Assembly (NCBI RefSeq): GCF_006345805.1 | Contig: NC_043015.1 | Span: 20,026,001-20,090,000 of the forward strand | Direction: 5' to 3' | DNA length: 64,000 nucleotides | From: Octopus sinensis | Lineage: Eukaryota | Shown here: in pieces, positions 5,658-28,983 of the stretch | Layout: every line of letters begins with the position of its first letter | Position numbering within the stretch: position 1 is the first letter of the stretch | Translations under genes and position numbers: made by a program | The notes under the pieces: model-generated | Told to the model about the DNA's origin: nothing | Databases searched by the model: none | What the model saw: only the letters and a program-made list of their open reading frames with translations

Positions 5658-5760
5658 CTACAGTTGAAACATTTTTATGTACAAAATGGTTAAAATTACA
5701 AGAATCCAACTTATTCTGGAAGAAGCAGCACCACCAATTCGGCATTTCAATGTATCATAC
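5658..5760 (-). CDS. GPR158/179-like protein, last coding exon (GPI-signal-like tail)
   Basis: Acceptor ttcttttttag, phase 2. Encodes YDTLKCRIGGAASSRISWILVILTILYIKMFQL*. The seven exons sum to 2655 nt = 884 aa + stop. Confidence 0.85.
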
Positions 5761-7692
5761 CTAAAAAAGAAATAAAACAGAAAAACAATCATAAATGTTA
5801 GTGATGGCATGAACATCACAACTCTCCTCTCATCCTCGAAGTTAAATGGGCGGATAACTTGCATCCCAAAAGATGAAGCAACTTCCCTGAAGCTCGCTTC
5901 CCAAATGCATGGTTTTGGTTTCAAACCCCACTGCATGGCACCTTGAGCACTTGTCTCCAATAGCTCCAAGGTGACCAATGCCTTGTGAGTGAATTTGGTA
6001 AATGGAAACTGAAAGAAGCCTGTTGTATAAGTGTATATATACATGCGTCGTCGTTTAACATCTGCTTTCCATGCTGGCATAGGTTGGATGGTTTGACAGG
6101 ACTGGCAAGCTAGAAGGCTGCACCAGGCTCCAATCTGATCTGGCAAAGTTTCTACAGCTGGATGCCCTTCCTAACGCCAACCACTCCAAGAGTGTAGTGG
6201 GTGCTTTTACATGCCACCGGCACGAGGGCCAGTCAGACATTACTGGCAATGACCAAGCTCAAAAGGTGTTTTTTACATGCCACCTGCACGGGAGACAGTC
6301 CAGTGGCATTGGCAACGACCACGCTCGAATGTTGGGCAGTGTTAATAACTTCGCATTAAAATTCAATACTCAAATGCTTCAAAGAAAAGCATTAATTGAG
6401 CAGAGAGGATAATGTGAAATTACATAAATGATGAGAGAAAAGGAAATTACACAATGAATTTCATTAGCTCACAGCTGTTTCTGCTATGAGATGCAGAGCA
6501 GTCATAACTAAGTGCTTGTACGTCACATTTACAGCTTCAGTGGAGCTTCTAAAATGAAGTACAAGTTTATTTGGGGAATCATTTATATTTGCATCTTACA
6601 GCAGAAACAACTGTAAGCTATTGAAACTTATTAACTAGTTTCCTGTTTCCTTGTCATTTATTTAATTTCACACACACAAACAATCTGCATGTGTGTGTGT
6701 TGTAACTTCACATCGTGAGATAGTTGTAACTAAGTGTCACCATTCTATAAGCAGTGTTCTGGGAAAACAGATCTGGCCAGGAGGAAATATTACCTCACTT
6801 GCAGACAGGCAGGAGTTGGCAACAAGAAAGAACAACTGGGTGTAGAACATCTACCTCAACACATTCCTTCGTTCTGACCCATGCAAACTTGAAGAAGTAG
6901 ATGTTAAAATGATGATGGCAACAATGATAAGCATATGTGGCTGTGTGGTTAGAAGCTTGCTTACCAACCACCTGATTCTAGGCTCATACACTTGCCCAAA
7001 CTGTGTGGCACCTTGAGCAAGTGTCTTCTACTAAAGCCTTGAGCCAACCAAAGCCTTATGAGTGGATTTGGTAGATGGAAACTGAAAGAAGGCCATCATA
7101 TATGTGTGTGCGTGTATGTTTGTTTGTTCCCCACCATCTCTTTTCAACTGGTGTTGGTGTTTTTATCTCCCCATGTCTTAGCAGTTTGGCAATAGAGATC
7201 AATAGAATAAGTACCGAACTTTTAAAGGGGAAGTACTGGGGTCAACCAAAAAAACTTAAGATTCTTGAAGGTGATGCCCCAGCATGGCCACAGTCTACGG
7301 ACTAAAACAAGATAAAAGATAACATATTCATAAACCTGAAATATATCTGATTAAATCTAACTCAATGCTAAATCCCCTTCTGTGTCTGATTTGGCGTGAT
7401 TCTTATGGCTGGATGCCCTTCCTAACACCAACCACTCCGAGAGTGTAGTGGGTGCTTTTACGTGCCACCGGCACAAGGGCCAGTCAGGCGGTACGGGCAA
7501 TGGCCACGCTCAAATGGTGTTTATGATGCCTTTACTCCCATGCATCCCCTTTTATGAGATTCTGAAGAGAATTATGGGTAGGGCACTGCTCTTCATTCTC
7601 AGACAAAGCCTTTTTTATATTTTTTTTACCATACAGCTCAAAACATATTTTACCCATTTCTATTTTTGTTGTAGCAAAAATACTGATCTTAC

Positions 7693-7850
7693 CTGTTTGG
7701 CTCATTGTTCATCTTTTTCTTGTATTCATCAACCATTGTCTGACCGTTGTAATACCACTGCAGGTCCTTAAATGGGTATTCATAGCCCTGCTTACATTCA
7801 CATTTGTAGGAACCTTCTTGGAATTTCAAATGGGATTGCAATGGAACACA
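7693..7850 (-). CDS. GPR158/179-like protein, coding exon 6 (EGF-like segment 2)
   Basis: Acceptor ctgtttccag and donor AG|GTAAGA. 158 nt, phase 0 to 2. Encodes CVPLQSHLKFQEGSYKCECKQGYEYPFKDLQWYYNGQTMVDEYKKKMNNEPN(R), paralogous to exon 3. Confidence 0.9.
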
Positions 7851-9084
7851 CTGGAAACAGAAAGAATTAACTCTTATTGCATCATATTGTTTCTGATCAA
7901 AATCACCGAAAAATATTTAAAAACAAAAATATAGAACAATAAAGAACTAGGAATCTAAAATAGATCATAAAGGCAAATAAAAATAATTAGTGATCCAAAC
8001 ATGATCAATGCGAGGGCTGCCTGACTGGTTCCTGTGCCCATGGCATGTAAAAAACACTCACTACACTCTCAGAGTGATTGGCATTAGGAAGGGCATCCAG
8101 CTGTAGAAACATTGCCAGATCAGATTGGAGCCTGGTGCAGCTGCTAGCTTTCCAGACCTCAGTCAAACCGTTCAACTCATGCCAGCAAGGAAAATTGATG
8201 TATGATGATGACAGCACATCTACAAGAGATGTTATTTGGAGAAAAACTGCAGCATCTTGCCTGTCAAGGGTGTATTAATATAAAGTATGACACGTAGATG
8301 GCTGTTTTAATTTTATGCTTTAATTGCATACACTGAGTTTTGATTCAGCTCAATGGCTATTTGCAATATCAGTGAACGTATTATTAACTGTTTACTATAT
8401 TGGATGAAAAAAAAATCTTATCTAGGAGTGTGACATGTCATTGACAAAACCAATAAGGCTAAAATATATTCCTGTGTTCTCTCCAGCTGCTGCCACAATG
8501 ATTTTTCATCTTTCGTTGAGGTATATATATACACTCATATGTGTATGTGTGCTTGTAAGTGCAGGTTGTGTAATAAGAAGCTTGCTTCCCAACCACATGG
8601 TTCTAGGTTCAGTCCCATTAAACCACTGGATAGCACCTTGGACAAGTGTCTTCTACTATAGCCTCGGGCTGACCAAAGTCTTGTAGGTGGATTTGCTAGA
8701 CGGAAACTGAAAGAAGCCTGTTGTGTGTGTGTATGTGTGTATTTTCAGTTAAATCAAGGATATAAAAACTTCTTAAAGGGATGTCAGCATCCAATTTGCT
8801 GGATTTCAGATAAGTGCTCTTAATATGAGGGATGTCTAAAACCTTGAAGTTATTTAGTGATTCAATTAGAGCGATTACGTATTAGAAAGTAAAAGCAGGA
8901 AAAATTACATCATAAAAATCACAATAGAGACATGTCCATAATATGAATAATATTGTATAAATAAATAAATAAAGTATAGCTATGATTATTTAAAAAGGTT
9001 TGAAATGTCTTACGATATCTTATAATCATAGTTATCCCTGTGATTTTTATGATGTAATTTTTCCTGCTTTTACGTTCTAATATG

Positions 9085-9290
9085 ATAGTAGTCCACTTGT
9101 GACTGAGGAAGACCATTGCTGACCTTCAGGAATATTGTGCGCTCTAGGACTAACTTATGTTTTGCATTTGTGACTCCGTTGGTGGCTAATGAGCCCTGCT
9201 CTTGACAAGTATACACGACTGCAAACATTGCAAACCAAGCTTAAGTCCTTCATAAAGAATACGTACTCTCTCAAAAGTGTCGCCCCCCTC
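9085..9290 (-). mobile_element. RTE-like LINE 3' terminal fragment
   Basis: LVCNVCSRVYLSRAGLISHQRSHKCKT* followed by a short 3' UTR-like tail. Confidence 0.55.
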
Positions 9291-10656
9291 CCCCCACCTT
9301 AACCTGCTTCCTCCATCTGTGGTGATTACAGGCATTGTTCTCCCCATCAGTCTCCTGCATATCACAGGCCTTTAATGGGGACTTGACTTGAAGGACTTGA
9401 GGACTTCTAATATATATATATATATATGATACCTGTGCTGGTGGCACGTAAAAAGCACTATCCAAAAGTGGCTGATGCCATCAACGCCATGACTGGCTTC
9501 CGTGCCGGTGGCACATAAAAAGCACCAACCGATTGTGGCCGTTGCCAGCCTCCTCTGGCCCCTGTGCCAGTGGCACATAAAAAGCACCCACTACACTGAT
9601 GGAGTGGTTGGCATTAGGAAGGGCATTCAGCTGTAGAAACACTGCCAGATCAGACTGGAGCCTGGTGCAACCTCCTGGCTTGCCAGACCCCGGCTGAACC
9701 ATCCAACCCATGCTAGCATGGAAAACGGACGTTAAATGATGATGATGATATATATATGAAAAGGAGACAAAAAGTTGTCCTAGAAACAAGTGAGACACTT
9801 GTCTTGGCAGCAACTATCGAGACACTTGTCCAATGTTCCATACAATGGGACTGAATCCAGAATCACATGGTTGGTAAGCAAACACTACTTAACAATCCAG
9901 TCATGCACAATCTAAATACAAACTTACAAAGCTCACAGATATGTATCAACTCTATAATGAACAGAATCCAAAGAGACTTATGTAGTTTGTATTGAAAAGA
10001 CTTGAGTAATTTAGTACAATCAACAGAAAGAGTGCAGTGAACTTGCTGTGGGGGAATGGAAAATCCAACATTTCGGATTGAGTTCTTCTTTATAAAAAAG
10101 TTGACTGAAGAGGAATTCAAGAAAGAGAGCAGAGCTTTACATCCTCTCTCAATACTGCAACTTCTCTAAACTCTTTTTGTCAATTTTACCATGTAAGGAA
10201 CAGACTTATGCACAGATGGAAAGTATCACAAATAATAGAAAAACTACACAGAAGCTAAAACACACACACACATACACACTTATGTTAACTCTTTTGATAC
10301 CAACCCACATGAGTTCACCCCTGCTGGTTCTATGATACAAACTCCCCGTTTTAAAGTGATCTAAGTCAAAGACTTCCATCTAAATTCCTTGTTAATTCAT
10401 GTTCCAAACACCAGCTTAATAACGACCAAGTTATTTTACTAAATTCTTCATTATTTTCAAAATTAATTGAGATAAAATCAGAATATCTCAACAGAAATAT
10501 AACAAAATGGTTAACAAACGTCTATAACAATGAACCTACAAAAAACACACAACATATGTATTGTATATACAAATGCTGGCACCGGTGATACTAAAGATGG
10601 TGATTCTGCTATCAATAATATTAATTTGCTAGCATCACGTAAAATAAATGTCTTAC

Positions 10657-10774
10657 ATATGTGCTCTCATAGTCACAACGAGCAGTGTTCTTGAAGGCGT
10701 TGGCAACATAAAAATCAGCAGGGCACTGGTCTACATCCAAATGTTTGATGTCAACATCAACTGTGACAACTCCC
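10657..10774 (-). CDS. GPR158/179-like protein, coding exon 5
   Basis: Acceptor cttaatttcag and donor |GTAAGA. 118 nt, phase 2 to 0. Encodes (K)GVVTVDVDIKHLDVDQCPADFYVANAFKNTARCDYESTY, clearly paralogous to exon 2. Confidence 0.9.
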
Positions 10775-13527
10775 CTGAAATTAAGAAAAAAAAGGTGTGG
10801 AAAATATTAGTAAATGATATATATAACAAGGGTTGAACTGAAGAGGTGAGGAGGAAGAGAGTGAAAAGATTAGTTGAAATATACTTATAGATTAACTAGA
10901 AGAGCAATACAGATTAGTAAGGAGCTGCGAATAAATAAGGTAGATAGGTATAGACTAGTAAGAATGAGCTGTAGATTAGTAAAAGTGACAATAAAGATTA
11001 GCAAAAAAGTAAGTACAGAATAGCAAGAAGGAAGAATAGATTAGCAAGAATATGGATGCGTGAACTAGATTAGCAAGAACATACAAGCGTGATCATTGCC
11101 AGAGCAACAAGCTGGCCTCCATGCCAATGGCATGTAAAAAGCACCATTTGAGTGTGATTGTTACCTGCATCACCTTACTGGCACTAATGCTGGTGGCATG
11201 TGAAAAAACATTCGAGCGAGGTCGTTGCCAGTGCTGCTGGACTGGCTCCTGTGCAGGTGGCACATAAAAAGCAACATTTGAGCATGGCCGCAGCCAGTAC
11301 TACCTGACTGGCCCTTGTGCCGGCGGCACGTAAAATCACTCACTACATTCTTGGAGTGGTTGGTGTTAGGAAAGGCACCTAGCTGTAGAGACTCTGCCAG
11401 ATCAGATTGGAGCCTGGTGCAGCCATCTGGTTCGCCAGACCTCAGTCAAATCGTCCAACCCATGCTAGCATGGGAAGCAAACGTTAAACGATGATGATGA
11501 TGATGGATATAGATTAGGAAAATTATAAATCAAAATTAGCAATACAGAAAGTATAGATTAGCAAAATCTGGGTTTAGATTAGCAAGACGACAGATATTGA
11601 TTATCAAGGAGCTAGGAATAAAGTAGCAAAAAAAGAGTACTAAAAACTTATTAAAGATAAGAACATAAGAATTAGCAAAAATAATGAAAAAGAAAATCAA
11701 ACATTTAAAAAAAATAATCAAGAATAACAAGAATTTGATGAGATTATTGCTAATCTGTTTTTGTTCTGGGTAGGACTTTAATCAGTATCCAGTAACAGAA
11801 CTTAACCCTAATCCTGGTTCTGGGGTTTTCAAAGTTTTGAAAAGTATGAAACCACTTCTTAACGGCTATTGTCCTTGGGTCAACTCTGATATGAGAGTAG
11901 TAATACTATAAGTTAAACAGCAAGTAACTACCCAAACCAGGTTATTTTGAAATCAATGGACGCAGTATGATGGATGTGAACAAGAAACCAACAGTTAACA
12001 GCCATGATAAACCAGTTCAGTTAGCGAACTACTATCATTATAAGCTGTGGAGTACACAGGTGAGATACTTCAGCTAGCGAAAGAGCAATGTGACTAAAAC
12101 TTGGGTCAGGCATTCGTGCCTAATCACTCGATCAGGTTGTCTGGTGTGGAAGAATTACACATAGGTCTGGGTAGATTGTCCGACCTGGATGGTGAAAATA
12201 TCAGTAGAGACTATCACTGCCAATCACTTGAGACTAATTTGCTACTGCTGTTGTTGTTGTTGTTACTACTACTACTACCACCACCACCACTTCTACTACT
12301 ACAATAATAGCAAGCTTCTACTTTAAGGAATTAGCTACATGACTTCACCACAAAGAAACCATTACTTTTCCTTTCATCACTTTCACTGTTTTGTCACCTG
12401 GTCCCAAGAATTCACTACCCACTCCTATCTTTAATCCTTGACATACTTCAGTCCTTAGACTGCAACCATGCTGGAGCACCACCTTGAAGGGTTTCAGTCA
12501 AACAAATTTACTCAAGTGGTTATTTTCTTTTGAGCCTGGTGCTTGTTCTACTGGTCTCTTTTGCTGCCAAACCACTAAGTGACATAAACAAACCAACACC
12601 AGTTGTCAAGTAATGGTAGGGGACAAATACACACATAAATATACAGGTACACACACACACAATGGGCTTCTTTCAGTTTCCATATACTAAATCTACTCAC
12701 AAGGCTTTGGTCAGCCCAGGGCTATCGTAGAAAACACTAGTCCAAGATGTTGCACAGTGGGACTGAACCTTTGATCACAGGGTTGCAAAGCAAGCTGCTC
12801 ACCCACACAGCCACACCTTGTTACATTTTTTTCTGCAAACATTGACCTACAAATGTTGATACTGAACATCAGCCACATTAATGTCTGCATCATGGGACAA
12901 CCTGAAAAGATCACAGGCACTATTTTGTTGCTTCTGATAAAATGTTTTGTCTTTATTATTCTTTCACTAAAGCGGTGAGCTGGCAGAATCGTTAGCACAC
13001 AGGGCAAAATGCTCAGAGGCATTTCATCTGTCTTTACGTTCTGAGTTCAAATTCCACTGAAGTCAACTTTGCCTTTCATCCTTTTGGGGTCAAATGTGAT
13101 TTTTATTTATGCCCCATAACAAAGCAGTTCAACAGAGACTGATAAGATAAGCACTAAATCTAAAAATAAAAACTGGGGTCTGGATCAATACAATCACTCC
13201 CAAATCCTTCAAAATGGTACCTCCAGCATGGCTGCAGTCCAATAACTGAAAAATGGGAAAGACAGACAAAAAAAATAGCAGAATTGGTTTGAATCATTAC
13301 CATATTTGATGGCATAAAAGACACACAAGTATATTTAAATGCACTTAAACATACTCAATTTTAGCAGCATGTTATGCAAGAGCAAAAAAATTAGTGCGTT
13401 AAAGTGAATGGAAAAACCAACTTTGCACACAGGACCCAGGGTGGTTTTTAAGATATTTGCTTTTGAAACAAAGTGCATCTAATAATCCATCAAATATGGT
13501 AGGTTAATTAGCAAAGAGGCAACTTAC

Positions 13528-14527
13528 TTAAACTCAATTTGAGTCTTCAATGTATTCATTCCAAAGAATGGAACAACATAAGTGAGGACCCAAGCATCAA
13601 CTCTGCCATCACACTTAAAGACAGGACGTAACCATTCTCCATCTTCATATTTTGGTGCATGGTATGTGAGTGGATAATACTCAAATCTAATCAAGCTGGA
13701 TCCATTGATATCTGACCGAATCATTGGACGAGTTATAAATTTTTCCAGTGATTGATAATTAGTTGCCCAACGAGATTTCATGTCAGTAAACCAGCGCTTA
13801 TTTGTGTAACGCTGCTTGAAACCTGCAAAATCAATTACTCTGGCAGTTGTTTTGTCACCAGTTTTCCAAGCAAACGGACCAAAATATTCTCGTGTTACTT
13901 CATTAACATAGCGTGGGTCAGTGTTATTTCCGGGTGATATCCGGTATTTGTATTGGTCAAAGAATACACCAGCACCAACGATCTTGAAGTCACCCATGAC
14001 AGTAGCAATAACCTCTCCATACATCTGGGTATCATGTAAGCGTCGATCACCTCGAAGAATACCAAATTCTTCATACTCATCAACATTTTGAAGAAAATTA
14101 CTGAGAAAGTGAGCCAGCCTCAGTGCAGTACGTCCTTGTGATTCAAACTGCTTCTCAGCACCGAACCCAGCATCTCCTGGAAGAAGCAATTGGTTTGCTG
14201 TGCGGCTTCCGCAGTTGTCTTTGTTGGTGTTTTCTTTACGTTCAAGGATTTCTCGCATTCTCATCCACATGACATTATCAAAGAGATCACGTTTCTTACG
14301 AGAAAGAAGGTCTTCTTTTGGAACATGCCGCCTATATCTACTGGTCCGTAATGGAATGAAATCTTTTGAAGTGTATTTTTTATTTGATTGCAGCCATCTG
14401 AGACTCCTGTGGGACTGAGGAAATATAAGTTTCAGAAATTCGTCTTTCTCAGAACTATAAGATGATATAGACCGTTTCTTCATATTCTCAATAATAGTTG
14501 GGTTCTTCTTTGGGATTACCTGAGAAA
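13528..14527 (-). CDS. GPR158/179-like protein, coding exon 4 (basic linker + Cache-like module 2)
   Basis: Acceptor tttttgtttctag (phase 1, matching exon 3) and donor AA|GTAAGT. 1000 nt. Contains RYRR and RKKR|DLF, then NKDNC, QGRTALRLAHFLSNFLQ, GAGVFFD, YFGPFAW, RWF and WLRPVFKCDGRVDAWVLTYVVPFFG. Confidence 0.9.
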
Positions 14528-16059
14528 CTAGAAACAAAAAATAAAAAATAAAATTAAGTGAATTTTTATCAATCTTTCCTAAAATATCCACAAAACAAAC
14601 AAACAAAAAACCCATCGTCCTTATTATCATCATTTATTATCTGTCTCCCATGCTGGCTTGGGTTAAACAAAAAGACAAACTACATTGGTTGTTTAACCAA
14701 AAAAGATCAGTATTCTTTCAACCAAGATGTACTCAAATGTACAACAGCCTAATCATAGCTTAGTTGGCTGAAACTTCGAAGTCACTGTCAGTACAAATAC
14801 TATTCTTGTTTACATTTGTAAATAATGTACATAATTCCTCATCTCTCAAATAAGGAACTGTACTATTCTTGATAATGGATATTAAATAATTAAATAAGTA
14901 GATACACACACACCAGGCTTCTTTTAGTTTCCATCCACCAAATCTACTTGGCTTTGATTGGTCTGGAGCTGTATAAGACATTTGCCCAAGGTGCCATGCT
15001 GAAGGATTGAACCTGAAACCAAGTGGTTGGGAAGCAAACTTCTGAAGCTCACAGCTATGCTTGCAACCATTCTTAAGGTTAAAATTAATTTTATTATTAT
15101 TATAAGGTGTTTAGCAGCATTTCATTTGTCCTTATGCTCTGAGTTCAAATTCCACCATGGACAACTTTGCCTTCCATCTTTTCAGAGTTGATGTAATCAA
15201 TTTATTCCCTTCCCACAGAATTCCAGGCTTTGTGCCTATAGAAGAAAGGATTATTATATGGTGGTGGTCAGTTGGCTGAATTGTTAGCACATCAGACAAA
15301 ATGCTTAGCATCATTTCGTCGACCTTTATGTTCTGAGTTCAAACTGTGCTGAGTCAACTGTGTCAAGTGCCAGTTGAGCATAAAAAAATAAAACTAGATA
15401 TTTGTTTCCTCAAGCCATACCAAGTTTGTGAGGACCAGTTTCCTGGTTTCATCATCATCATCATCGTTGTTTAACGTCCACTTTCCATGCTGGCATGGGC
15501 TGGATTGTTAAACTGTGAACTGTTAAATCTGATCTGGCAAGGTTTCTACCGCTGGATGCCCTTCCTAACGCCAACCACCTCAAGAGTGTAGTGGGTGCTT
15601 TTTACATGCCACTGGCACAGAAGTGGGGGTGGTAGTCAGGCGGCACTAGTATCAATCATGCTCGAATGGTGCTTTTTATGAACTACTGGCACAGGGGCCA
15701 GTCAGGCAGCAGTGGCACTGACCATGCTTGAAAGGTGATTTTTATGAGCCACTGGTATGGGTACCAGTCAGACAACACTGGCATGTCAGGCAAAATGCTT
15801 AGTGACATTTCACCCATGACTATGTCTGAGTTCAAATCCCGCTGAGGTTGACTTTGCCTTTCATCCTTTTGGGGTCAATAAATTAAGTACCAGTGAAACA
15901 CTAGGGTCGATAATACAGTTCTATATTTAAGAGATGAGGAATTATGTACATTATTTACATTTGATGGATATTTGTCCTCATCTTGTTTGTTGTTATACCT
16001 GATATACCCTCAAGCCTTCATCAGGTGTCGAACCTGTGTTCTCATTCCTAAGGTATTTT

Positions 16060-18701: not shown

Positions 18702-19097
18702 CCCATTTTGTCCAGTGTGCTAACAATCTACCAGCTCGCAATAATCATCATCGTTTAACATCTGTTTTCCATGCTGGCATGGGTTGGACGGTTTGACTGA
18801 GGACTGGCAAGCTCCAATCCAATCTGATCTGGCAAGGTTTCTACAGCTGGATGCCCTTCCTAATGCCAACCACTCCAAGAAATAATGATAATCCTTTCTA
18901 CTATTGGCACAAGGGTTGATTACTTTGACCCCAATGCTCAACTGGTGCTTATTTCATTGGCCCCCAAAAGGATGAAGGGCAAAGTCGAACTTGGTAGCAT
19001 TTGAACTCAAAACATAAAACTGGAAGAAACAATTCTGCCAGCTTGCTGCCTTACAAATAATAATAAGATAAATGAAATAACTAATGAATTTCCTTAC

Positions 19098-19263
19098 AAT
19101 CAACTTTGAGACAATCAAAGCCAGTTTCATATTCTTCTTTTGTAGCAGCTTCTATTTCTACTCCAAGGAATGGTCCATCATGCCACCAGGGATATTTGTA
19201 TCCAGGTAGGCATGCACACATGTAACCACCACGTCGGAAACCAAAACCACTCAAAGGTTCACA
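19098..19263 (-). CDS. GPR158/179-like protein, coding exon 3 (EGF-like segment 1)
   Basis: Acceptor tttctttcag and donor T|GTAAGG. 166 nt, phase 0 to 1. Encodes CEPLSGFGFRRGGYMCACLPGYKYPWWHDGPFLGVEIEAATKEEYETGFDCLKVD. Confidence 0.9.
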
Positions 19264-20614
19264 CTGAAAGAAAATACAAATCAGTTTATTATACATGCAT
19301 ATATGTAAACACACACACACAGACAGTGGCTGAGCATCCTGTCCTTGGTGGGCAACTTTTAAAACACAATGCCTTGGCAGAGTTTCGGGATAGCACACTC
19401 ACATAAGCTGGATTTTCTCTATTTTCACAGACATTTTTCAAAATTTTTTCCACTACATCCTTTACAAACGATGAAATGAAGCTTTTTATGAAAAAATTCT
19501 TTGAAAATGCATGAATCTTTCTTCCCCACTTCCAGACTGATTTTGTTCAATTTTTTTTGCCCTATGCACTTACAATGGGAAATAAATGCAATTTTGGTAA
19601 AAAAAAAAAAAAAAAAAAAAAAGTAATTCTTTGGAAAATTAAAAATTTTTTTTGGTAAAAAAAAAAAAAAAAAAAAAAAAAAGTAATTCTTTGGAAAATT
19701 AAAAATTTTTTTCAAATCTCACTCCCCCACTGAGTTCCAAATTTGGCCAATTTTTTTTGTTGCCTTGAAGGTTTGAAAGAAGAAAAAAAATTGGAAATGG
19801 CAATCTCCACTTCCTTTATTTTCAAACAGAAAATACAACATAATACTGGAATCTTCAATTTTTTCATTAACCTTTCTTTCCCATCCATAAATTCTGAAAT
19901 TTTCATTAACCCTCCATAAATCCTAAAATTTCGATTTTTTACTAAAATTTTTCTTTAATCATAGTTTTAAAATACAAACAGTCTGAATCTGCAATTTGCT
20001 TCTGTTTATGAGTTCAAAATAATTTTCAGACAAAAATGTGTATGATTTAAGGGAGGCTAAGCTGTTGTTTCTAACACATCCCACAACCACCTGCTACCTT
20101 ATGCATTTCTTTGTCACTGTGACAATATCCATTAACAAGAATAGTACAGTTCTATATTTGAGAGAAGAGGAATTATGTACATTTTTTCAATATACCCCCC
20201 CCCCCCCAACATTTTCTGGGATGATGCTGTGGTGGTCTATAGCTAGTATATAAGGCAACAAAAACAACAAAATTTTTAATCCACCATCCTACATCAGGCA
20301 AACCCATGTGTGTGTGTTTAAGAAAAATCATAATTACTAACATAAAAGTATGCTATTAAAATAAATTATCATTTACATACCTTTTGCAAATCACACTGTC
20401 ACCCTAATGAAATTCCATACATACATGCATACACACACACTCAGCATAAGTGATATACTTTTATAGAGAATGAGAGAGAGTGTGATAAAAATGTGTAGAG
20501 AAGGGGAAAGTTTACCATGAGAAAAGCAAAATCGATTTTCAAATTTGGTATATTGATGTACTTTTTCATGCTGAATATGAGTTTGTGATTTGTTTATTCC
20601 AGCAATATTCAAAA

Positions 20615-20651
<37 letters not shown>

Positions 20652-20694
20652 CGAAATCGATCAATGGAAATCGATCAATGGAAATTGCAGATGT

Positions 20695-21050
20695 GTTACC
20701 AGTGCCGGTGGCATGTAAGAGAACCTTCCGTTTCGCGACCGTTGCCAGCACCGCACTGTTTCGTGTCCATTGCCAGCCTTGCCTGGCCCTCGTGTCGGTG
20801 GCACATAAAAAGCACCATCCGTTCGTGGCCATTTGCCAGCTCTGTCTGGCACCAGTGCGGGTGGCACGTAAAAAGCACCCACTACACTCACGGAGTGGTT
20901 GGCGTTAGGAAGGGCATCCAGCCGTAGAAACACTGCCAGATTTGACTGGGCCTGATGAAGCCTTCTGGCTTCACAGACCCCAGTAGAACCGTCCAACCCA
21001 TGCTAGCATGGAAAGCGGATGCTAAACGATGATGATGATGATGATGATGA
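20695..21050 (+). mobile_element. SINE/LINE-tail repeat with GGAAGGGCATCCAGC core and (GAT)n tail (family 2)
   Basis: About 20 copies, e.g. 1375-1640 +, 6045-6335 -, 9425-9750 +, 11090-11505 +, 15455-15785 -, 37840-38190 - and 62930-63450 -. The 3' end resembles RTE-clade tails (inference). It accounts for most spurious WLDALPNANHS-type ORFs in the track. Confidence 0.8.
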
Positions 21051-22448
21051 TATATATATATATATATATAGCAATAAGAAAATGGAAGGGATCAATAGGT
21101 GGTTCATCAATTTTTAGACATTATATTGTGTCAATTTATTTATACATGTATGCATATTCTTGTAATTGTCATTTTAGTAAATAAATAAATAAATTGACAT
21201 AATATAATGTCTAAAAGTTGATGAACCACCTATTGATCCCCTCTATTTCCTTATTGCTCTATAAATTAATGGTAAAATAACTCTTTACCCTCACCCATTT
21301 AGTACACTCAGTAATGTAATTGCAATGCAATAAAAAACACTTGTGTATTAATAATTGGGTATTCTACCAGCAGTATAATGGATAGATATTATCCCTTAGT
21401 GGGTTGGATTCACAACCTCTAATTTTCTTGGAATTAATATATATATATATATATGAGGTTTTGGTATCCAGAGGACCCAAGAGGCAGGTAAGGCTAAATA
21501 AGCACTATGGAAGGACTGCTGTTAAACTCCTGGTTCAATAATAGTATGACTGTGGAGTCTAAGGTGGGTCGTGTCTGAGCATGTATATGTTAAATAAAAT
21601 GAGATAACAAGGCCAGAGCAAAGTGATATTTCTAGGACATTTATAAAGAAGGTGGTCTTACAGTTGTTTCAGGGAAATAAATGATATCCCATCATCAGAG
21701 ACATGTTAAGAGAAAACTCTCTTAACAACTTGTCTCTGATGATGGGATAACATTTATTTCCCTGGAATAGCTGTAAGCCCACCTTTCTATTCATAAATTG
21801 CCTTGGCCGTGTTATCTTATTTTAGTTAACACACACATATATATCATCATCATCTTCATCATCAAATGTCTGTTTTCCATGCGGGCATGGTCTGGACAGT
21901 TTGACCAGAGCCAGTAAGGTCAGAGGCCACCCACCAGACTCCATCAAAGAATAAGTCCTGGGGTCAGTTTGACTAAAAAAAAACCTTTAAGGCAGTGTTC
22001 CAGCATGGCCACAGCCAAATGACTGAAAAAATTAAAAGAATATGTATATATTATAGTAAGTTATGGTGTGTAACAATTTCTATTTTCACAAAACTTGTAA
22101 TCTTTTACAAGACCTTTTAACGTTTACATTTCTTTTACAATTCTGTGGCAAACAGACAATGATGTCAATGTGTCTTCATAAAAAAAAAATATTTGCTTTG
22201 TTCTGCAGTGATGACATTTAAGTTGACACTAATTAAATCGAGATATACAACACAATTGAGACTGGCGATAATAAAATTGACAGAAATGGTGGTGAATTCG
22301 AGTTTGACATCAATGAAATCAAAATTGATGAAATTGAGGAGAAAACTCAGTAAATCTCAACACATCATACACCTGCCACCAGTATTCTTCTCTCAAACCC
22401 TCACATTTCCTTGCATTTACTCAAAGACTTTAAAGGAATCGTTCTCAC

Positions 22449-22575
22449 TAAAGTGGTGGGTTTGCATCGAGCTGTGTTAGCAAAATAGTTTGGTGAGGGA
22501 TTTCCGTCAGCTATTGGACATGGGTTAAAATCAATACGTTCAAATTCCAAATCAACAGTCGTAACAGCCACAAAT
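22449..22575 (-). CDS. GPR158/179-like protein, coding exon 2
   Basis: Acceptor tttcttttag and donor |GTGAGA. 127 nt, phase 2 to 0. Encodes (Q)FVAVTTVDLEFERIDFNPCPIADGNPSPNYFANTARCKPTTL. Not in the ORF track; found by reading the minus strand. Confidence 0.9.
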
Positions 22576-23084
22576 CTAAAAGAAAAAAATATATAACAAG
22601 AGAGTAAAATAAGATAAACAAATAAAACAAAAGCAAATCTTGCAATTTATGAAATTATGTATTTTTTTTATTAAGCACTGGAAGACTACACTCTCTGTCT
22701 TGAGCAAGAGACTTCATTTTATGTGGTTCTTGTCCACTCAACTAGCAAAAATGAGTTGTACCTGGAATCCAAAGGGCCATGGAGTACTCGGCCACTTACA
22801 TGTTAATTTCAGGAGCTGGCTGTTCTGTTGATCGGATTGACTGGAACACTCGTAACTAACAGAGTGACAGTTTTACAAAACACACACATATATATATATT
22901 TTTTTCTTTTACTTGTTTGTCATTTGACTGCAGCCATGCTGGAGCACCACATTTAGTCAAGCATACTGACCCCAGGACTTATTTATTGTATTGGTCTCTT
23001 TTGCTGAGCCGCAAAGTTACGGAGACGTAAATACACCAGCATTGATGTTGTGGGGGACAAGCACAGACAAACATATACACACAT

Positions 23085-23128
<44 letters not shown>

Positions 23129-23378
23129 GATCGGCTTCTTCCAGCTTCCATTTACCAAATCTACTCACAAGGTTTTGGTAGGCTCAAGGTTATATTAGAA
23201 GACTCCTGTGCCCCTATATATATATATATATATATATATATCACCGTGTCCGACAGGCTATCAGATGTTGCTACACATCGCTGGTCACAATGCGCTTCGC
23301 ATTGTTTTAGTCTTCAAATGATGCCACCCCGCTGGCTAAGCAAGCAGGCCATATATATATATATATTATATATATATA

Positions 23379-23423
<45 letters not shown>

Positions 23424-23919
23424 TATATATAAATAACTGCCACAATTTGATGCTAGAACAAACCTGCCAGTCTTGACTCCATTTACAAAGATACTTCAAG
23501 AACAATTTGGAGTTGTTTGTTATATTTGACTCGAGTTTAAAATTCTGATGCTGTGCATTGCTTCTAAGCTGCACCAGGCTCCCATCGGATCTGGCAAGGT
23601 TTCTACAGATGGATGCCCTTCCTAACACCAACCACTTCGAGAGTGTAGTGGGTGCTTTATACATGCCACCGCCACAGGGGTCAGTCAGGTGGTCCTGGCG
23701 TTGATCATGTTCAGATAGTGCTTTTTACATGCCACTGGCACAGGAGCAAGTCAGCAGGTGCTGGCATTGGGCATAGTCAGATGGTGCTTTTTACATGCCA
23801 CCAGCATGGGATTCAGTCAGGCAGACCTGGCATCAACCACAACAAAACACAATTGTTTCTTAAGAGACTTTCTTGTGACATAAACATGGTACAGGCAGGC
23901 ATGCAGTATATATATATAT

Positions 23920-24800
23920 ATAAGGTTAATCCAAACGGGAAAACAGAAAAAACAACAACACAAGGAGGTAGAATAATTAAAGTATTATTATTAGGCGCTC
24001 AGGAAAATGGGAAGAAGGAATATATATATATAATAGAAATAATTTACAAAAAGAAAATAGAAACTACACATGGAAATGTAAGGGGAAAGTAAGAAGAAAA
24101 ATAAGCGAAAATGCACATTGGAAATCGAAAAAGTAAAGGCTTTTTATGAAAAGTAACAATAGATATATACAATTAGATGAACTGAGGTAGGAATAAAAGT
24201 AATAAAAGTCATTATTGTGAATTGTTAAAGAGATTTAAAAACATACTGGTTTCGTAAATTTACTAATCATTGCTTTGAATGCACACCAATTAATGAACAG
24301 TGTCAGGTCTACTAGTCCCTGAGTAAAAAGATTATGAGTAAGGGAGGTAAGTAGTTCTGGTTTTGGTGTAATTAGGGTAGATATAGATCTATAATGTGAA
24401 TGGTGTATGGGATGTATGTGGGTTTGTATTAATTGAAAAGTTAGTAGTATTCTGTATTATGTTATGTGTTCATATTGAGTTGGGGAAGATATTTATAGAT
24501 GAAAGTTGCCTCTGTATTCCTTTTTTGTTGTACTGAGGTGTTCTGTGAACATTGATAGAAGGGGAAAATTAGGAAATTAGGATTAAGATTCCTAGCACAC
24601 CTTTCTATGTGTTCACTAACCTGTATCTATCTGTATTGTGGGTGGCGAATTTGTTCTTTGTGGAGAGTGGCTTTTCGACAGAGTGATATTCCTGCTTGGC
24701 CAATATAATTATTACCACACCCTAAGCATGTCATGGCACAGATTAGATTTTCTGAAGCACAGGTGAAATTTAATTTGATCTTAAATATTTCACCTTCACT
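23920..24800 (-). mobile_element. Penelope-like element remnant (GIY-YIG endonuclease and 3' region)
   Basis: Minus strand 24790 to 24471 reads FTCASENLICAMTCLGCGNNYIGQAGISLCRKATLHKEQIRHPQYR*IQVSEHIERC...KRNTEATFIYKYLPQLN, the PLE-type GIY-YIG with CxxC insert. Confidence 0.8.
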
Positions 24801-24859
24801 TTAAACAAGGTTTGACCACTTCCTGTACCTATATCTTAGAACCATCATGGCCATCCGAT

Positions 24860-25350
24860 GTGGCTTTTTAAACCAGACAATGTTCTGAAAAGATACCCAC
24901 ACAGATTGCATATCTGATTTAGACCACCAAGAGCTGCAGATAAGTTCTGATCTTTGTGGATCTTAAAATGTCTTTTGAAGCCTCCTTTGGATTTGCAAAC
25001 CTAGCATACGCTGCATTCAAAGGTGTGCTCAGACATATAGGCAGAATAATTGGTGGAAATTCGTTTTCCATGGGTTCACTGATGAGATTTGAGTCCAGCA
25101 AAAGACAGGTATGGTCTGTCACAGACTGTGCACACAAAAAGGTCATTGTTATTCACCTTCCTGATAGTTACATTCTTCTTTAGATCTCTGAGTCCTACAT
25201 GCACTATCCTGGGCTCTTCAAATGCTTTCACTCCACTCTACACTTTTATTCGCCATTCAACTCGATCCGAAGCAAGGGTTTCTATGTCTTCTGGATCCAT
25301 TCCAAGTGACTTCATAGTAGTCCTTAAACATCTTTTTTAGGTTTACGCCA
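24860..25350 (-). mobile_element. RTE-like LINE 3' end with C2H2 zinc fingers
   Basis: CTVCDRPYLSFAGLKSHQ*TH and ICNLCGYLFRTLSGLKSH resemble the C-terminal fingers of RTE-like LINEs. Interrupted by stops. Confidence 0.55.
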
Positions 25351-25540
25351 ATAGTGTTTCCCCTCTGCAAGATCTGTTTTGGCATGCACTCATCTGCCAT
25401 TCAAACAATCTGGCCACACCATCTCATTTGCTTCCTCAAAATCATAGCTTCAATTGAGGTGATGACTGCAGATGCAAGGACATCTGTGTTTGGGATAAAA
25501 GGACTCCATTTAATTTTTTTAAAAAGTTTACATACATATA

Positions 25541-25925
25541 GGCGCAGGAGTGGCTGTGTGGTAAGTAGCTTGCTAACCAACCACATGGTTCCGGGTTCAG
25601 ACCCACTGCATGGCATCTTGGGCAAGTGTCTTCTGCTATAGCCCCGGGCCGACCAATGCCTTGTGAGTGGATTTGGTAGACGGAAACTGAAAGAAGCCTG
25701 TCGTATATATGTATATATATATGTGTGTGTGTGTGTTTGTCCCCCTAGCATTGCTTGACAACCAATGCTGGTGTGTTTATGTCCCCGTCACTAAGCGGTT
25801 CGGCAAAAGGAGACCGATAGAATAAGTACTGGGCTTACAAAGAATAAGTCCCGGGGACGATTTGCTCGACTAAAGGCGGTGCTCCAGCATGGCCGCAGTC
25901 AAATGACTGAAACAAGTAAAAGAGA
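25541..25925 (+). mobile_element. tRNA-head SINE, near full length (family 1)
   Basis: Head GGCTGTGTGGTAAG...GGTTCAG with A/B-box-like elements, a microsatellite middle, and tail GCTCCAGCATGGCCGCAGTCAAATGACTGAAACAAG. More than 15 copies in both orientations, e.g. about 6935-7320 +, 12455-12815 -, 17570-17890 -, 22910-23220 -, 39410-39665 + and 57415-57790 -. Confidence 0.8.
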
Positions 25926-26666
25926 AGAGAGAGATACATATACACGTGTTGCCTGAAATCTGATGAAAAGATTGGCGGAGAGTAACAGACATGACATATC
26001 TGAGGAAACTCAGAAATTCGACAGTGTTTGATTACATTCCACATGAGGAAACATCAACATACAACTGTTGCTGAAGGATATTTATATAGTAATCCTAAAG
26101 AATAATCTGAAATAATGATATATAGATGTAAACAGGGCAACTTAAAGCTAGGCGTCTGGCGCAGAAACAAATGTTGCATTTTGATACTACTTCCATGTTC
26201 GTGTTATATGTCATCATTATCATCATCGGTTAACATATAATATTCTACTTTGATAAAGGGTTCAACCAAAATGCCATTCTCTTTTCCTTTACTTTTTTGG
26301 CGAAAGGTGCACAACTTTGATTCTTATTTTTTGTGTGTGCTTCTATATTCTGTCCATCACTTCTCGAATATTAGATCGACTTGTAATCTCTCACGTTGTC
26401 CATTTGTACATTACTTATTCCCCCGCGTTCTATTTTTCAAATATAGATATGTAGGATAGATATCCAGGAATTTCAAAGTGGAACAGTTGGACTAGCAGTC
26501 GAGTGTGCCCAAAGTAAAATAAATGCGTCATTAATTTAAAGTGAAATCATACACATAGCTATAAACTCGATCCTAATTATTTAACTAAAACTTAATTCGC
26601 ATTTGTATATTCTTAGGAACATAAAATATGAAAGAGAGAAATATAATATAAATATAATATACTTAC

Positions 26667-27649
26667 TGAGGTCTTCTTAAATGAGTAAAATTCGAATATC
26701 GAGGCATAAACTCAACAACAGGAGATGTTGCACTAACAATCCATTTATTTGATCGTCCACAATCAAAATAAGGATCAGTGAAGACAACAGGAAGGATCGT
26801 CATTTCTTTAGTACCCGGTTGAGGTGGGCCAAAGAAAGAGGATACTTGGAAAGTGTCGGTAAGAAATTCACCTGTCTTTTCTGACCGTCGAATACCAATA
26901 TTGTAGGTATATTTCCTCAGTGTATCTAAATTACTGTTGAGATCAGGTAACCATTTAGAGTACCAAGGGCTGTGTTTGTAGGCAGAGTTGGTATAATTAC
27001 GACTTCGACCGGCTCCAAAATCGTGAATGTCAATCGTATTGTTTGTAGGTTCCCGCAACCAATTTGTGGGTTCGTTGTAGTCATCCACTCTCCAGGCTTT
27101 GGGGCCAAAAAGGGGTAAAGTACCGTTGATTTTCATCGTCGTGTACCAATTAGGATATGAACAGTTGTTGTCAAAGAACAGTCCACTACCATTTATCATA
27201 CTAATTCCAGCGGAAACATCAGCGGCCAAAGAGAAGTAGATATATTCAAAACCTGGTTGTCTACCTAAGGCCTCGCTCTTGTTAAGTTCCTGATAGATAT
27301 AACTGTAGTAAAATGCCCTATTAAGGGCCAAGTTGTGAGCGTGCAACAGAGAAGATCTATTTGTGTAATAAACAGTCGACAAGAATTTATTATAACGAGG
27401 TACTTGGGATATAACACCTTTTTTTAGTTCTGTATCCAAACGAAGATCTGTGTAGTGTTTCGAACGACAATTTTCTCCAGTTACCGATGTAAACTTATCC
27501 ATTATTTCATCAAAATTGTCTTTTGAAGAAAGTTCGAAAGGTTTTCCATTACTTGAAGAATCACTCCAAGAAAATGAAAATATTAAAATACAAACAAATA
27601 CCACAAATGCCGAGCTGGGGAAGCCGATACAACTCGGCCTTCTCTTCAT
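26667..27649 (-). CDS. GPR158/179-like double-ectodomain protein, coding exon 1 (signal peptide + Cache-like module 1)
   Basis: ATG at 27649 (the track's start at 27703 is a TTG). MKRRPSCIGFPSSAFVVFVCILIFSFSWS resembles a signal peptide. It is followed by VTGENC, LALNRAFYYSY, GLFFD, LFGPKAW, PWY and FTDPYFDCGRSNKWIVSATSPV, motifs typical of GPR158-type ectodomains. Donor CA|GTAAGT at 26666, phase 2. Confidence 0.9.
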
Positions 27650-28619: not shown

Positions 28620-28621
28620 AG

Positions 28622-28689
<68 letters not shown>

Positions 28690-28940
28690 TTTATATATAT
28701 ATATTAGATATATATAGATAGATTTTATATATACATATAGATTTTATATATATATACATATAGATTATATATATATATATATATATATAGATAGATTTTA
28801 TATATACATATATATATATATATATAGATAGATAGATTTTATATATACATATATATATATATAGATTTTATATATACATATAGATTTTATATATATATAT
28901 ATTTACTAATTTATATATATATATTATATATATATATATC

Positions 28941-28983
<43 letters not shown>

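What the first reader, a model, noticed from the sequence alone, without database searches (positions are those of the whole stretch)
5658..27649. 7TM-less, double-Cache/EGF GPR158-like protein with a GPI-type tail: candidate ligand-binding co-receptor or decoy
Seen: a complete 884-aa, 7-exon CDS with a signal peptide, two paralogous modules (exons 1-3 versus 4-6, e.g. DFNPCP...FANTARC versus DVDQCP...FKNTARC, and GGYMCACLPGYKYP versus GSYKCECKQGYEYP), no transmembrane bundle, and a small-residue + hydrophobic C-terminus (GGAASS-RIS-WILVILTILYIKMFQL). Established: the GPR158/GPR179 ectodomain is a Cache + EGF-like unit; in GPR158 the Cache domain binds glycine and sits on a class C 7TM. Inference: this gene keeps only the sensor domain, duplicated and lipid-anchored, so it could sense or sequester amino acids, or act in trans as a synaptic or chemosensory partner. 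Similar 7TM-less proteins probably exist in other invertebrates as uncharacterised predictions, so the function rather than the sequence may be what is new.
Basis: partly seen in the sequence, partly recalled or inferred. Interest (0 to 1): 0.7.

Follow-up and report, generated by a model that had tools for sequence, protein, structure and literature searches.

The report
Lipid-anchored double GPR158-type sensor protein
This octopus gene encodes a cell-surface protein made of two copies of the sensor domain of the glycine receptor GPR158, with no membrane-spanning signalling part and a predicted lipid anchor instead; the gene is real and already annotated, and it belongs to an old, strongly conserved, unstudied family that flies also have.

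Summary
A 7-exon, 884-aa minus-strand gene (27649-5658) splices with six GT-AG introns. Its product is 100% identical to RefSeq XP_029648182.1, "uncharacterized protein LOC115222177", Octopus sinensis.

It has a signal peptide, two paralogous Cache + EGF-like modules (BLASTP E 2e-19; two shared intron positions and phases) and no 7TM bundle. After the last invariant Cys come 26 residues that look like a GPI-attachment signal.

Each module separately matches the ectodomains of 7TM "metabotropic glycine receptor-like" proteins. An AlphaFold model of the 94%-identical orthologue finds GPR179/GPR158 first in the PDB, then bacterial dCache sensors.

The protein is not lineage-specific. Hundreds of same-architecture orthologues occur in molluscs, annelids, flatworms, rotifers, tardigrades, nematomorphs and arthropods (Drosophila 807 aa), alongside the 7TM paralogue. 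I found no functional study.

New here: 54 of 56 spiralian members, octopus included (R502-K-K-R505), carry a furin-type motif at the start of module 2; 0 of 22 arthropod members do. High pTM (0.82, 0.85) suggests the modules pack rigidly.

GPI anchoring, cleavage and any ligand remain predictions.

The parts
26667..27649 (-). Exon 1 (aa 1-327 plus 2 nt): start codon, signal peptide and the Cache part of module 1
   Evidence: ATG at 27649 is the first ATG of the ORF listed (26663..27703), which by that tool's definition begins just after a stop codon. Donor GTAAGT.
27563..27649 (-). Signal peptide, aa 1-29 (MKRR / hydrophobic core AFVVFVCILIFSF / SWS before DSS)
   Evidence: Most full-length homologues have an N-terminal hydrophobic segment. 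Helix 12-29 has low pLDDT in the model. No SignalP run was possible.
22449..22575 (-). Exon 2 (aa 328-370): last Cache strand and first part of the EGF-like stalk of module 1 (DFNPCP...FANTARC)
   Evidence: Entered in phase 2 and left in phase 0, as for exon 5.
19098..19263 (-). Exon 3 (aa 371-425): EGF-like part of module 1 (GGYMCACLPGYKYP) up to the invariant C421
13528..14527 (-). Exon 4 (aa 426-758): disordered basic linker and the Cache part of module 2
   Evidence: Linker pLDDT is below 50 at 440-499.
14289..14300 (-). Predicted proprotein-convertase (furin-type) site R502-K-K-R505, with cleavage expected before D506. A second motif, R489-Y-R-R492, lies at 14328-14339.
   Evidence: The motif sits 20-40 aa before the first Cys of module 2 in 54 of 56 spiralian homologues (2.9 expected by shuffling) and in 0 of 22 arthropod homologues.
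10657..10774 (-). Exon 5 (aa 759-798): DVDQCP...FKNTARC of module 2
   Evidence: This is the region most similar to GPR158/179.
7693..7850 (-). Exon 6 (aa 799-850): EGF-like part of module 2 (GSYKCECKQGYEYP)
5658..5760 (-). Exon 7 (aa 851-884 plus stop codon): last invariant Cys-Arg (C857 R858) and the C-terminal signal
5661..5738 (-). Predicted GPI-attachment signal IGGAASS-RIS-WILVILTILYIKMFQL: candidate omega sites G860-S864, a short spacer, and a hydrophobic tail that runs to the C-terminus
   Evidence: The rule-based features are conserved across phyla while the tail sequence itself is not.

Best explanation
Shown: the gene encodes a secreted-pathway protein with a signal peptide, two tandem paralogous GPR158/179-type ectodomain modules (Cache fold plus a 6-Cys EGF-like stalk; 8 invariant Cys per module), no transmembrane bundle and no cytoplasmic part. 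It belongs to a protostome-wide orthologous family that exists alongside the 7TM GPR158-like receptors.

Inferred, in order of decreasing certainty:
1. The C-terminal 23-26 residues are removed and replaced by a GPI anchor attached in the GGAASS cluster. Module 2 would then sit on the outer leaflet just as the GPR158 ectodomain sits on its 7TM domain.
2. The two modules pack against each other as a rigid intramolecular pseudo-dimer, the single-chain counterpart of the Cache-mediated ectodomain homodimer of GPR158/179.
3. In octopus and other spiralians a furin-type convertase cuts the disordered linker at R505/D506. This would give a two-chain protein whose module 1 stays non-covalently on module 2 or is shed.
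4. Having no intracellular part, the protein cannot signal alone. It most likely works as a membrane-tethered binding subunit that presents or captures an extracellular ligand (small molecule or matrix/HSPG protein) and acts through a partner in cis or in trans, on the logic of alpha2delta or GFRalpha co-receptors.
For: Gene model and architecture:
- The gene model is identical to the RefSeq protein.
- Module paralogy is E 2e-19, with shared intron positions and phases.
- There are 8 + 8 invariant cysteines. Octopus-fly identity is 43% (module 1) and 41.5% (module 2).

Homology to GPR158/179:
- The family profile hits only GPR158 (E 7e-20) and GPR179 (E 7e-17) strongly in the PDB.
- Octopus module 2 matches the ectodomains of 7TM 'metabotropic glycine receptor-like' proteins at E 1e-28 to 1e-36 over 270-364 aa. 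Module 1 matches them at E 1e-18 to 1e-23 over 120-169 aa.
- AlphaFold models of the 94%-identical O. bimaculoides orthologue (pLDDT 84.4, pTM 0.82) and of a fly-type orthologue (84.2, 0.85) both retrieve GPR179 (E 1e-11 and 1e-10; TM-score 0.59-0.62 against the ectodomain-only chain 8d1b_A), GPR158, and then bacterial dCache ligand-binding domains.

No 7TM:
- The hydropathy control separates this protein from 7TM relatives.
- A polyadenylated transcript of a relative ends after the tail.

GPI signal:
- 98 of 103 homologues have only 23-35 residues after the invariant Cys-Arg: a small-residue cluster, a spacer, and a hydrophobic tail to the C-terminus.

Furin site:
- 54 of 56 spiralians against 2.9 expected by shuffling; 0 of 22 arthropods.
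- The linker is disordered in the model.

Pseudo-dimer:
- pTM above 0.8 for a two-domain chain implies a confident inter-module orientation. GPR179/GPR158 ectodomains dimerise through Cache helices (PMC11437087). The long helices of both modules are among the most conserved stretches.
Against: - No experiment supports any step, and no dedicated GPI or signal-peptide predictor could be run.
- A short tail-type transmembrane anchor cannot be excluded. The same ambiguity is discussed for alpha2delta (PMC7351808).
- Inter-module packing is inferred from pTM only. Coordinates and PAE were not available, so the resemblance to the GPR158 dimer interface is untested.
- No ligand pocket could be compared. 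Sequence similarity to human GPR158 is detectable only from about residue 189 of the receptor onward.
- Arthropod orthologues lack the furin motif, so cleavage is not essential to the family's core function.
- No partner protein is known.
Confidence: 0.6

Rival explanations
1. Trans-acting adhesion or matrix-organising molecule. The modules would bind heparan-sulfate proteoglycans or laminin-G-domain matrix proteins on the neighbouring cell or in the cleft, as the GPR158 ectodomain binds glypican-4 and the GPR179 ectodomain binds pikachurin. No small-molecule sensing would be involved.
For: The two vertebrate ectodomains have documented protein or HS partners (PMC7928303; PMC11437087). GPI-anchored surface proteins are common synaptic and adhesion organisers. 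Conservation is very high over the whole surface of both modules, not just a pocket. Three invariant N-glycosylation sequons lie in module 1.
Against: No partner was identified, and nothing is known about where the gene is expressed. The fold is a ligand-binding Cache fold whose nearest non-receptor matches are small-molecule sensors. This reading overlaps with the best explanation (a binding subunit) rather than excluding it.
Confidence: 0.3
2. Amino-acid sensor or decoy. One or both Cache modules would bind glycine or another amino acid, either buffering it at the surface or passing the signal to the 7TM paralogue. Module 1, shed after furin cleavage, could act as a soluble sink.
For: The GPR158 Cache domain is reported to recognise glycine and taurine (PMC12834959). 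The nearest bacterial structural matches are amino-acid, amine and cytokinin sensors such as PctD, TlpQ, McpU and AHK4. The 7TM paralogue coexists in the same genomes.
Against: GPR179, the best structural match, does not respond to glycine and has a different pocket (PMC11437087). The pocket residues could not be aligned. There is still no glycine-bound mGlyR structure.
Confidence: 0.2
3. Single-pass, tail-anchored type I membrane protein rather than a GPI-anchored one. The C-terminal hydrophobic stretch would stay in the bilayer.
For: Many homologues end with 2-5 polar or basic residues after the hydrophobic stretch (e.g. ...LLLWKH...PYNRR), as a stop-transfer would. The same debate exists for alpha2delta.
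Against: The octopus hydrophobic run is only about 16 residues and contains a Lys. The small-residue cluster 8-10 residues upstream is conserved across phyla although the tail sequence is not, which a TM anchor would not require.
Confidence: 0.12
4. Annotation artefact: a GPR158-like receptor gene whose 7TM exons lie outside the window or were missed.
For: Only 5.6 kb of sequence lies downstream of the stop codon. Several database names call homologues 'G-protein coupled receptor 158'.
Against: The in-frame stop directly follows a conserved tail in more than 100 orthologues from many phyla. Intronless polyadenylated RNA contigs from 116 blocks of the contig collection encode the complete 865-aa relative, with a 1.6-kb 3' UTR and no further ORF. 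True 7TM paralogues are separate genes in the same taxa.
Confidence: 0.02

Closest known systems
GPR158 (mGlyR) and GPR179, class C orphan GPCRs
   Same: Each module has the ectodomain design of these receptors: a Cache fold with one conserved disulfide, followed by a Cys-rich EGF-like stalk. The sequence motif FKGVVTVDV-L--LDINQC...C...C-P...GSYKCEC matches GPR158 residues 261-360. Foldseek puts GPR179 and GPR158 at the top. The membrane-proximal position of module 2 is the same.
   Different: There is no 7TM domain and no cytoplasmic RGS7-binding tail. It has two ectodomain copies in one chain rather than a homodimer of one. Its stalk has 6 Cys rather than the 10 of GPR179's Cys-rich domain. 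A GPI-type tail replaces TM1. It is a separate ancient paralogue found only in protostomes in these searches.
Protostome 'GPR158/179 extracellular domain-containing protein' predictions (e.g. O. sinensis LOC115222177, D. simulans GD20036, Aedes AAEL002869)
   Same: It is this family. It is 100% identical to the O. sinensis entry, with the same length class (800-1000 aa), the same two modules, the same 16 Cys and the same tail.
   Different: Nothing differs. The family exists only as automatic predictions, and no name or function was found in the searchable literature.
[quoted passage not shown]
   Same: These are extracellular, heavily glycosylated, Cache-containing proteins that are cleaved post-translationally into two chains, most likely GPI-anchored, and act as auxiliary subunits without a signalling domain of their own (PMC7351808). 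That is the working logic proposed here.
   Different: This protein has no VWA/MIDAS domain. Structural similarity is not significant (alpha2delta chains at E 0.03-0.3). alpha2delta chains are disulfide-linked, whereas here the cysteine count suggests that all disulfides are intramodular. This is an analogy, not membership.
Bacterial and plant dCache/PDC sensor domains (soHK1S-Z6 3LIC, PctD, TlpQ, McpU, AHK4)
   Same: They share the fold of the Cache part (Foldseek E 6.5e-6 to 1e-2, TM-score 0.35-0.48; profile hit to 3LIC at E 2e-4).
   Different: Sequence identity is 7-15%. They have no EGF-like stalk, they are periplasmic domains of transmembrane kinases or chemoreceptors, and ligand-motif conservation was not tested.

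Membership tests
GPR158/GPR179 class C GPCRs | Extracellular Cache domain followed by a Cys-rich EGF-like stalk | tested here: met
   PDB phmmer and profile hits reach only GPR158/179 at E 3e-10 to 7e-20. Foldseek top hits are GPR179 (E 1e-11) and GPR158. Both modules separately match 7TM-type ectodomains. Pfam PF22572 is recorded on the orthologues.
GPR158/GPR179 class C GPCRs | Seven-transmembrane class C domain | tested here: not met
   Only the signal peptide and the C-terminal tail are hydrophobic. The same scan finds 4-7 TM segments in 14 7TM-type relatives. No 7tm_3 Pfam domain is recorded on any orthologue. The transcript of a relative ends after the tail.
GPR158/GPR179 class C GPCRs | Cytoplasmic C-terminal region that recruits RGS7-Gbeta5 | tested here: not met
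   The protein ends 27 residues after the last ectodomain Cys.
GPR158/GPR179 class C GPCRs | Glycine-binding pocket residues of the mGlyR Cache domain (e.g. S172) | not testable with these tools
   Alignments to GPR158 start at about residue 189-261. Model coordinates are not returned, and the primary paper is not held.
Two-module, 7TM-less GPR158/179-EC family of protostomes | Signal peptide, two paralogous modules with 8 + 8 invariant Cys, and an invariant C-R followed by a small-residue cluster and a hydrophobic tail | tested here: met
   100% identical to the O. sinensis member.
GPI-anchored proteins | N-terminal signal peptide plus a C-terminal signal: small omega, omega+1 and omega+2 residues, a 5-10 aa spacer, and a hydrophobic tail reaching the C-terminus with no cytoplasmic domain | tested here: met
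   A rule-based scan gives octopus GGA/GAA/AAS/ASS candidates 21-24 residues from the end and a best 12-residue window with mean Kyte-Doolittle hydropathy 2.49. 98 of 103 homologues pass. This is a home-made rule, not NetGPI or PredGPI.
GPI-anchored proteins | Release by PI-PLC or chemical detection of the anchor | not testable with these tools
   Experimental only.
alpha2delta / CACHD1 | VWA domain (MIDAS) combined with Cache domains | tested here: not met
   No VWA match appears in any PDB sequence or fold search. alpha2delta chains appear only at non-significant E 0.03-0.3.
Furin/proprotein-convertase substrates | An accessible R-x-[KR]-R motif in a disordered segment, conserved in position | tested here: met
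   R502KKR505 lies in a segment with pLDDT below 50. 54 of 56 spiralians carry the motif, against 2.9 expected. Actual cleavage is untested.

The most novel reading that the evidence does not exclude
The family is a previously unrecognised class of protostome surface receptor subunit. It would be a single-chain, GPI-anchored pseudo-dimer of GPR158-type Cache sensors, matured by furin in spiralians. It would capture an extracellular ligand and modulate a signalling partner such as the coexisting 7TM GPR158-like receptor (CG31760 type), a channel or a synaptic organiser. That would make it a Cache-domain counterpart of GFRalpha or alpha2delta that vertebrates have lost.
Probability: 0.25. Interest if true: 0.8.

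Novelty: new variant of a known kind. Interest (0 to 1): 0.55.

Why it matters
GPR158 (mGlyR) and GPR179 are medically important orphan-type receptors, linked to depression and night blindness. How their unusual Cache ectodomain works is still unclear, and there is no ligand-bound structure.

This family offers the same ectodomain in a natural, soluble-domain-only, tandem form. It is 41-43% identical between octopus and fly and more than 90% identical among higher flies. Such conservation argues for an important function, yet no study has addressed it.

Because Drosophila has one orthologue alongside the 7TM paralogue CG31760, the function is directly testable by genetics. The two-module chain may also be a convenient single-chain model of the ectodomain dimer for ligand screening and structural work. 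For cephalopod biology it is a candidate surface component of neural or chemosensory tissue, but no expression data were available here.

Tried and rejected
I used the 94%-identical O. bimaculoides orthologue instead.
2. A database search with the GPR158 fragment taken from the PDB alignment, meant to retrieve full-length GPR158, returned only short fragments. That search was wasted.
3. Mapping the mGlyR glycine pocket failed. Laboute et al. 2023 is not held. The only pocket residue named in the passages I read of the held papers is S172. Profile and phmmer alignments never reach GPR158 residues below about 189, even from an insect 7TM orthologue.
4. I considered and rejected the reading that the gene is a truncated receptor model.
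5. I considered filing it with alpha2delta and rejected that: no VWA domain and no significant structural match.
6. An Rfam scan of the window found nothing.
7. Four literature searches found no paper on the 7TM-less family or on its locus names.
8. The alternative exon 3/4 junction (model B, 879 aa) was rejected, because model A equals the RefSeq protein.
9. The D. melanogaster CG number of the orthologue could not be recovered with these tools.

Full report
**1. The observation**

The region holds a minus-strand gene of seven exons: 27649-26667, 22575-22449, 19263-19098, 14527-13528, 10774-10657, 7850-7693 and 5760-5658. All six introns begin with GT and end with AG, with good donor consensus (GTAAGT, GTGAGA, GTAAGG, GTAAGT, GTAAGA, GTAAGA).

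The spliced product has no mismatch to RefSeq XP_029648182.1, "uncharacterized protein LOC115222177 [Octopus sinensis]". It has 6 mismatches to the O. vulgaris protein and 50 to O. bimaculoides LOC106873574. The window is therefore Octopus sinensis, and the gene is already annotated, as an uncharacterised protein. An alternative exon 3/4 junction (879 aa) was discarded for this reason.

**2. Anatomy**

- Residues 1-29 form a typical signal peptide: MKRR, a hydrophobic core, then SWS before DSS.
- Residues ~34-424 (exons 1-3) and ~506-858 (exons 4-6) are paralogous, with 26% identity over 341 aa and E 2e-19.
- Two of the three intron positions fall at the same aligned residue and phase in both halves: RRPQ|F and IEFK|G in phase 2, and TTL|C and STY|C in phase 0. 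The duplication was therefore a genomic duplication of an exon block.
- In an alignment of 31 sequences from molluscs to flies, each module keeps eight invariant cysteines: C61, 297, 347, 365, 371, 386, 388, 421 in module 1 and C531, 731, 776, 792, 799, 815, 817, 857 in module 2.
- Three N-glycosylation sequons of module 1 (N97, N153, N175) are invariant.
- Both modules are about equally conserved. Octopus against Drosophila is 43% identical in module 1 and 41.5% in module 2.
- The signal peptide, the inter-module linker and the tail are poorly conserved in sequence.

**3. Relation to GPR158/179**

At the sequence level the protein, and a 64-sequence family profile, hit only GPR158 (E 3e-10 and 7e-20) and GPR179 strongly in the PDB. 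The match runs through the end of the Cache domain and the EGF-like stalk of module 2, with a weak hit to the bacterial PDC sensor 3LIC.

An exhaustive profile search found 1578 representatives at E 1e-3 or better. The long ones carry 4-7 hydrophobic segments, at least five in all but one, right after the matched region. They are named "metabotropic glycine receptor(-like)" or "CG31760-like", from a nematomorph, a hemichordate, a butterfly and a wasp. They align only to the module-2 half of the profile.

In direct BLASTP comparisons:
- Octopus module 2 matches these receptor ectodomains over the whole Cache + EGF unit (E 1e-28 to 1e-36, 270-364 aa).
- Octopus module 1 matches over the C-terminal Cache strands and the EGF part (E 1e-18 to 1e-23, 120-169 aa).

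Each module is therefore independently homologous to the receptor ectodomain. The membrane-proximal module 2 is the less diverged copy.

AlphaFold2 models were confident for the 94%-identical O. bimaculoides orthologue (pLDDT 84.4, pTM 0.82) and for a fly-type orthologue (84.2, 0.85). In Foldseek searches of the PDB both retrieve GPR179 first (E 1e-11 and 1e-10; TM-score 0.59-0.62 against the ectodomain-only chain 8d1b_A). GPR158 and bacterial or plant dCache/PDC ligand-binding domains follow. The "no Cache-fold match" refutation test is passed.

**4. No 7TM**

A Kyte-Doolittle scan finds only the signal peptide and the last 26 residues as hydrophobic segments. The same scan finds the TM bundle in every 7TM-type relative used as a positive control.

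None of the roughly 240 homologue clusters listed carries the class C 7TM Pfam domain. The 5.6 kb downstream of the stop contains only repeat and transposon-like ORFs.

A 70%-identical relative (865 aa) is encoded on intronless RNA contigs listed in 116 blocks of the contig collection. The longest (5184 nt) carries the full ORF, a 1.6-kb 3' UTR without any further ORF, an AATAAA signal and a poly(A) tail. The missed-exon explanation is effectively excluded.

**5. The tail**

After the invariant C857-R858 the octopus protein has 26 residues, IGGAASS-RIS-WILVILTILYIKMFQL. I applied a simple rule:
- omega residue in S/N/D/G/A/C and omega+2 in G/A/S/T;
- 15-32 residues from the omega residue to the C-terminus;
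- a hydrophobic 12-mer with mean Kyte-Doolittle hydropathy of at least 1.8;
- no more than 40 residues after the Cys-Arg.

Under this rule 98 of 103 homologues that retain the Cys-Arg pass. They come from molluscs, annelids, a brachiopod, nemerteans, flatworms, rotifers, insects, a horseshoe crab and springtails. The small-residue cluster ([AS]G[AS][AS]) is conserved, whereas the hydrophobic tail is conserved only in character.

This is the signature of a GPI-attachment signal rather than a transmembrane anchor. It remains a prediction: no dedicated predictor was available, and a tail-anchor reading keeps roughly 10% plausibility.

**6.

The linker between C421 and C531 is disordered in the model (pLDDT below 50 at 440-499) and variable in length (55-214 aa in spiralians). 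Even so, 54 of 56 spiralian homologues carry an R-x-[KR]-R motif 20-40 residues before the first Cys of module 2, against 2.9 expected from composition-preserving shuffles. All 56 have at least one such motif in the linker, against 17 expected.

In octopus the sites are R502-K-K-R505|D506 (window 14289-14300) and R489-Y-R-R492. Many relatives also have a second site about 20 residues after C421. All 22 arthropod orthologues examined have a short linker (62-74 aa) without the motif, and that linker is predicted to be helical and ordered.

The spiralian proteins are therefore probably matured by a furin-type convertase into a module-1 chain and a lipid-anchored module-2 chain. With eight cysteines per module, the disulfides are probably all intramodular, so the chains would be held together non-covalently, or module 1 would be shed. 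This last step is inference.

**7. How it most likely works**

The architecture leaves no way to signal autonomously. The pTM values of 0.82 and 0.85 for a chain of two equal-sized modules imply a confidently predicted fixed orientation between them.

GPR158 and GPR179 ectodomains are obligate homodimers through their Cache helices (PMC11437087). The long helices of both modules here (HLHNMALNRAFFYSY and ARTALRLAHFLSNFLQN) are among the best-conserved segments.

I therefore propose a single-chain pseudo-dimer of GPR158-type sensors, tethered by a GPI anchor. It would act as a binding subunit for an extracellular ligand and work through a partner in cis or in trans. The closest working analogy is alpha2delta: extracellular, Cache-containing, proteolytically processed, most likely GPI-anchored and an auxiliary subunit (PMC7351808). 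It is not a member of that family, because it has no VWA domain and no significant structural match.

What it binds is open:
- The vertebrate ectodomains bind both small molecules (glycine or taurine for mGlyR; PMC12834959) and proteins or glycans (glypican-4 heparan sulfate; pikachurin).
- GPR179, the best structural match, does not respond to glycine.
- I could not map pocket residues.

**8. Distribution and novelty**

Same-architecture proteins of 800-1000 aa occur in:
- molluscs (two paralogue groups), annelids, a brachiopod, nemerteans, flatworms, rotifers and an orthonectid;
- a tardigrade and a nematomorph;
- crustaceans, chelicerates, springtails and every insect order sampled.

Drosophila species have an 807-aa orthologue that is more than 90% identical to those of other higher flies. 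No deuterostome or cnidarian two-module member was seen among the named hits, whereas the 7TM type does occur in a hemichordate. All members are labelled "uncharacterized", "GPR158/179 extracellular domain-containing protein", or mislabelled "GPR158" or "Fras1-related".

Four full-text searches found no study of this family or of its locus names. So the sequence is known and the domain label exists. The architecture as a family (tandem, 7TM-less, GPI-type tail, furin site), its age and its conservation appear undescribed.

**9. Verdict**

This is a new variant of a known kind. Interest is moderate (0.55). It is not a discovery of a new gene, but it is a clean, testable lead on an unstudied, deeply conserved relative of a medically relevant receptor, with a Drosophila orthologue available for genetics.

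Noticed in passing
window 14289-14300 and 14328-14339 (-), within exon 4: Furin-type R-x-[KR]-R motifs (RKKR505, RYRR492) lie in the disordered inter-module linker. The position is conserved in 54 of 56 spiralian homologues and absent from 22 of 22 arthropod orthologues, whose linker is short and predicted to be ordered.
   Followed up: yes
window, e.g. 1369-1636, 5981-6420, 8002-8201, 9491-9756, 11207-11494, 20761-21032, 23568-23770, 37853-38038, 62949-63228: A roughly 290-bp interspersed repeat (71-92% identity between copies, both orientations; 37 further BLAST matches, whole copies and fragments) is scattered through the window, including five of the gene's six introns. It looks SINE-like. 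It also produces the recurrent spurious ORFs '...LGRASSCRNLARSDWSLVQ...'.
   Followed up: partly
window 30456-30960: A tandem array of 14 copies of a 36-bp unit (95% matches) is open in three reading frames, giving spurious ORFs of 147-187 aa. It lies about 3 kb upstream of the gene's start codon.
   Followed up: no
window 28614-29513: A roughly 0.9-kb (TA)n-rich low-complexity block (GC 0.22 in the 28-30 kb bin) lies about 1 kb upstream of the start codon.
   Followed up: no
window 1921-2148 (+): An ORF ending '...NFWSPNSPDYNLLDYYVWG...' resembles the C-terminal part of a mariner/Tc1-type transposase. It is probably a transposon remnant downstream of the gene. This is judged by eye only.
   Followed up: no
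window 33049-34148 (+): Several broken ORFs carry a reverse-transcriptase-like motif (...LLFMDDLKLYG...). This is probably a decayed non-LTR retrotransposon. It is judged by eye only.
   Followed up: no
P0057 (O. bimaculoides LOC106882646, 846 aa), not in the window: A second octopus paralogue (45% identical) ends at '...RKKRGLINR', just where the last small exon encoding the Cys-Arg and the tail would begin. The model probably lacks its final exon. Molluscs in general have two paralogue groups of this family.
   Followed up: partly
database labels of homologues: Many 7TM-less orthologues are named 'G-protein coupled receptor 158', 'putative G-protein coupled receptor' or 'Fras1 related extracellular matrix protein'. 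These names are misleading for proteins without a 7TM domain.
   Followed up: no
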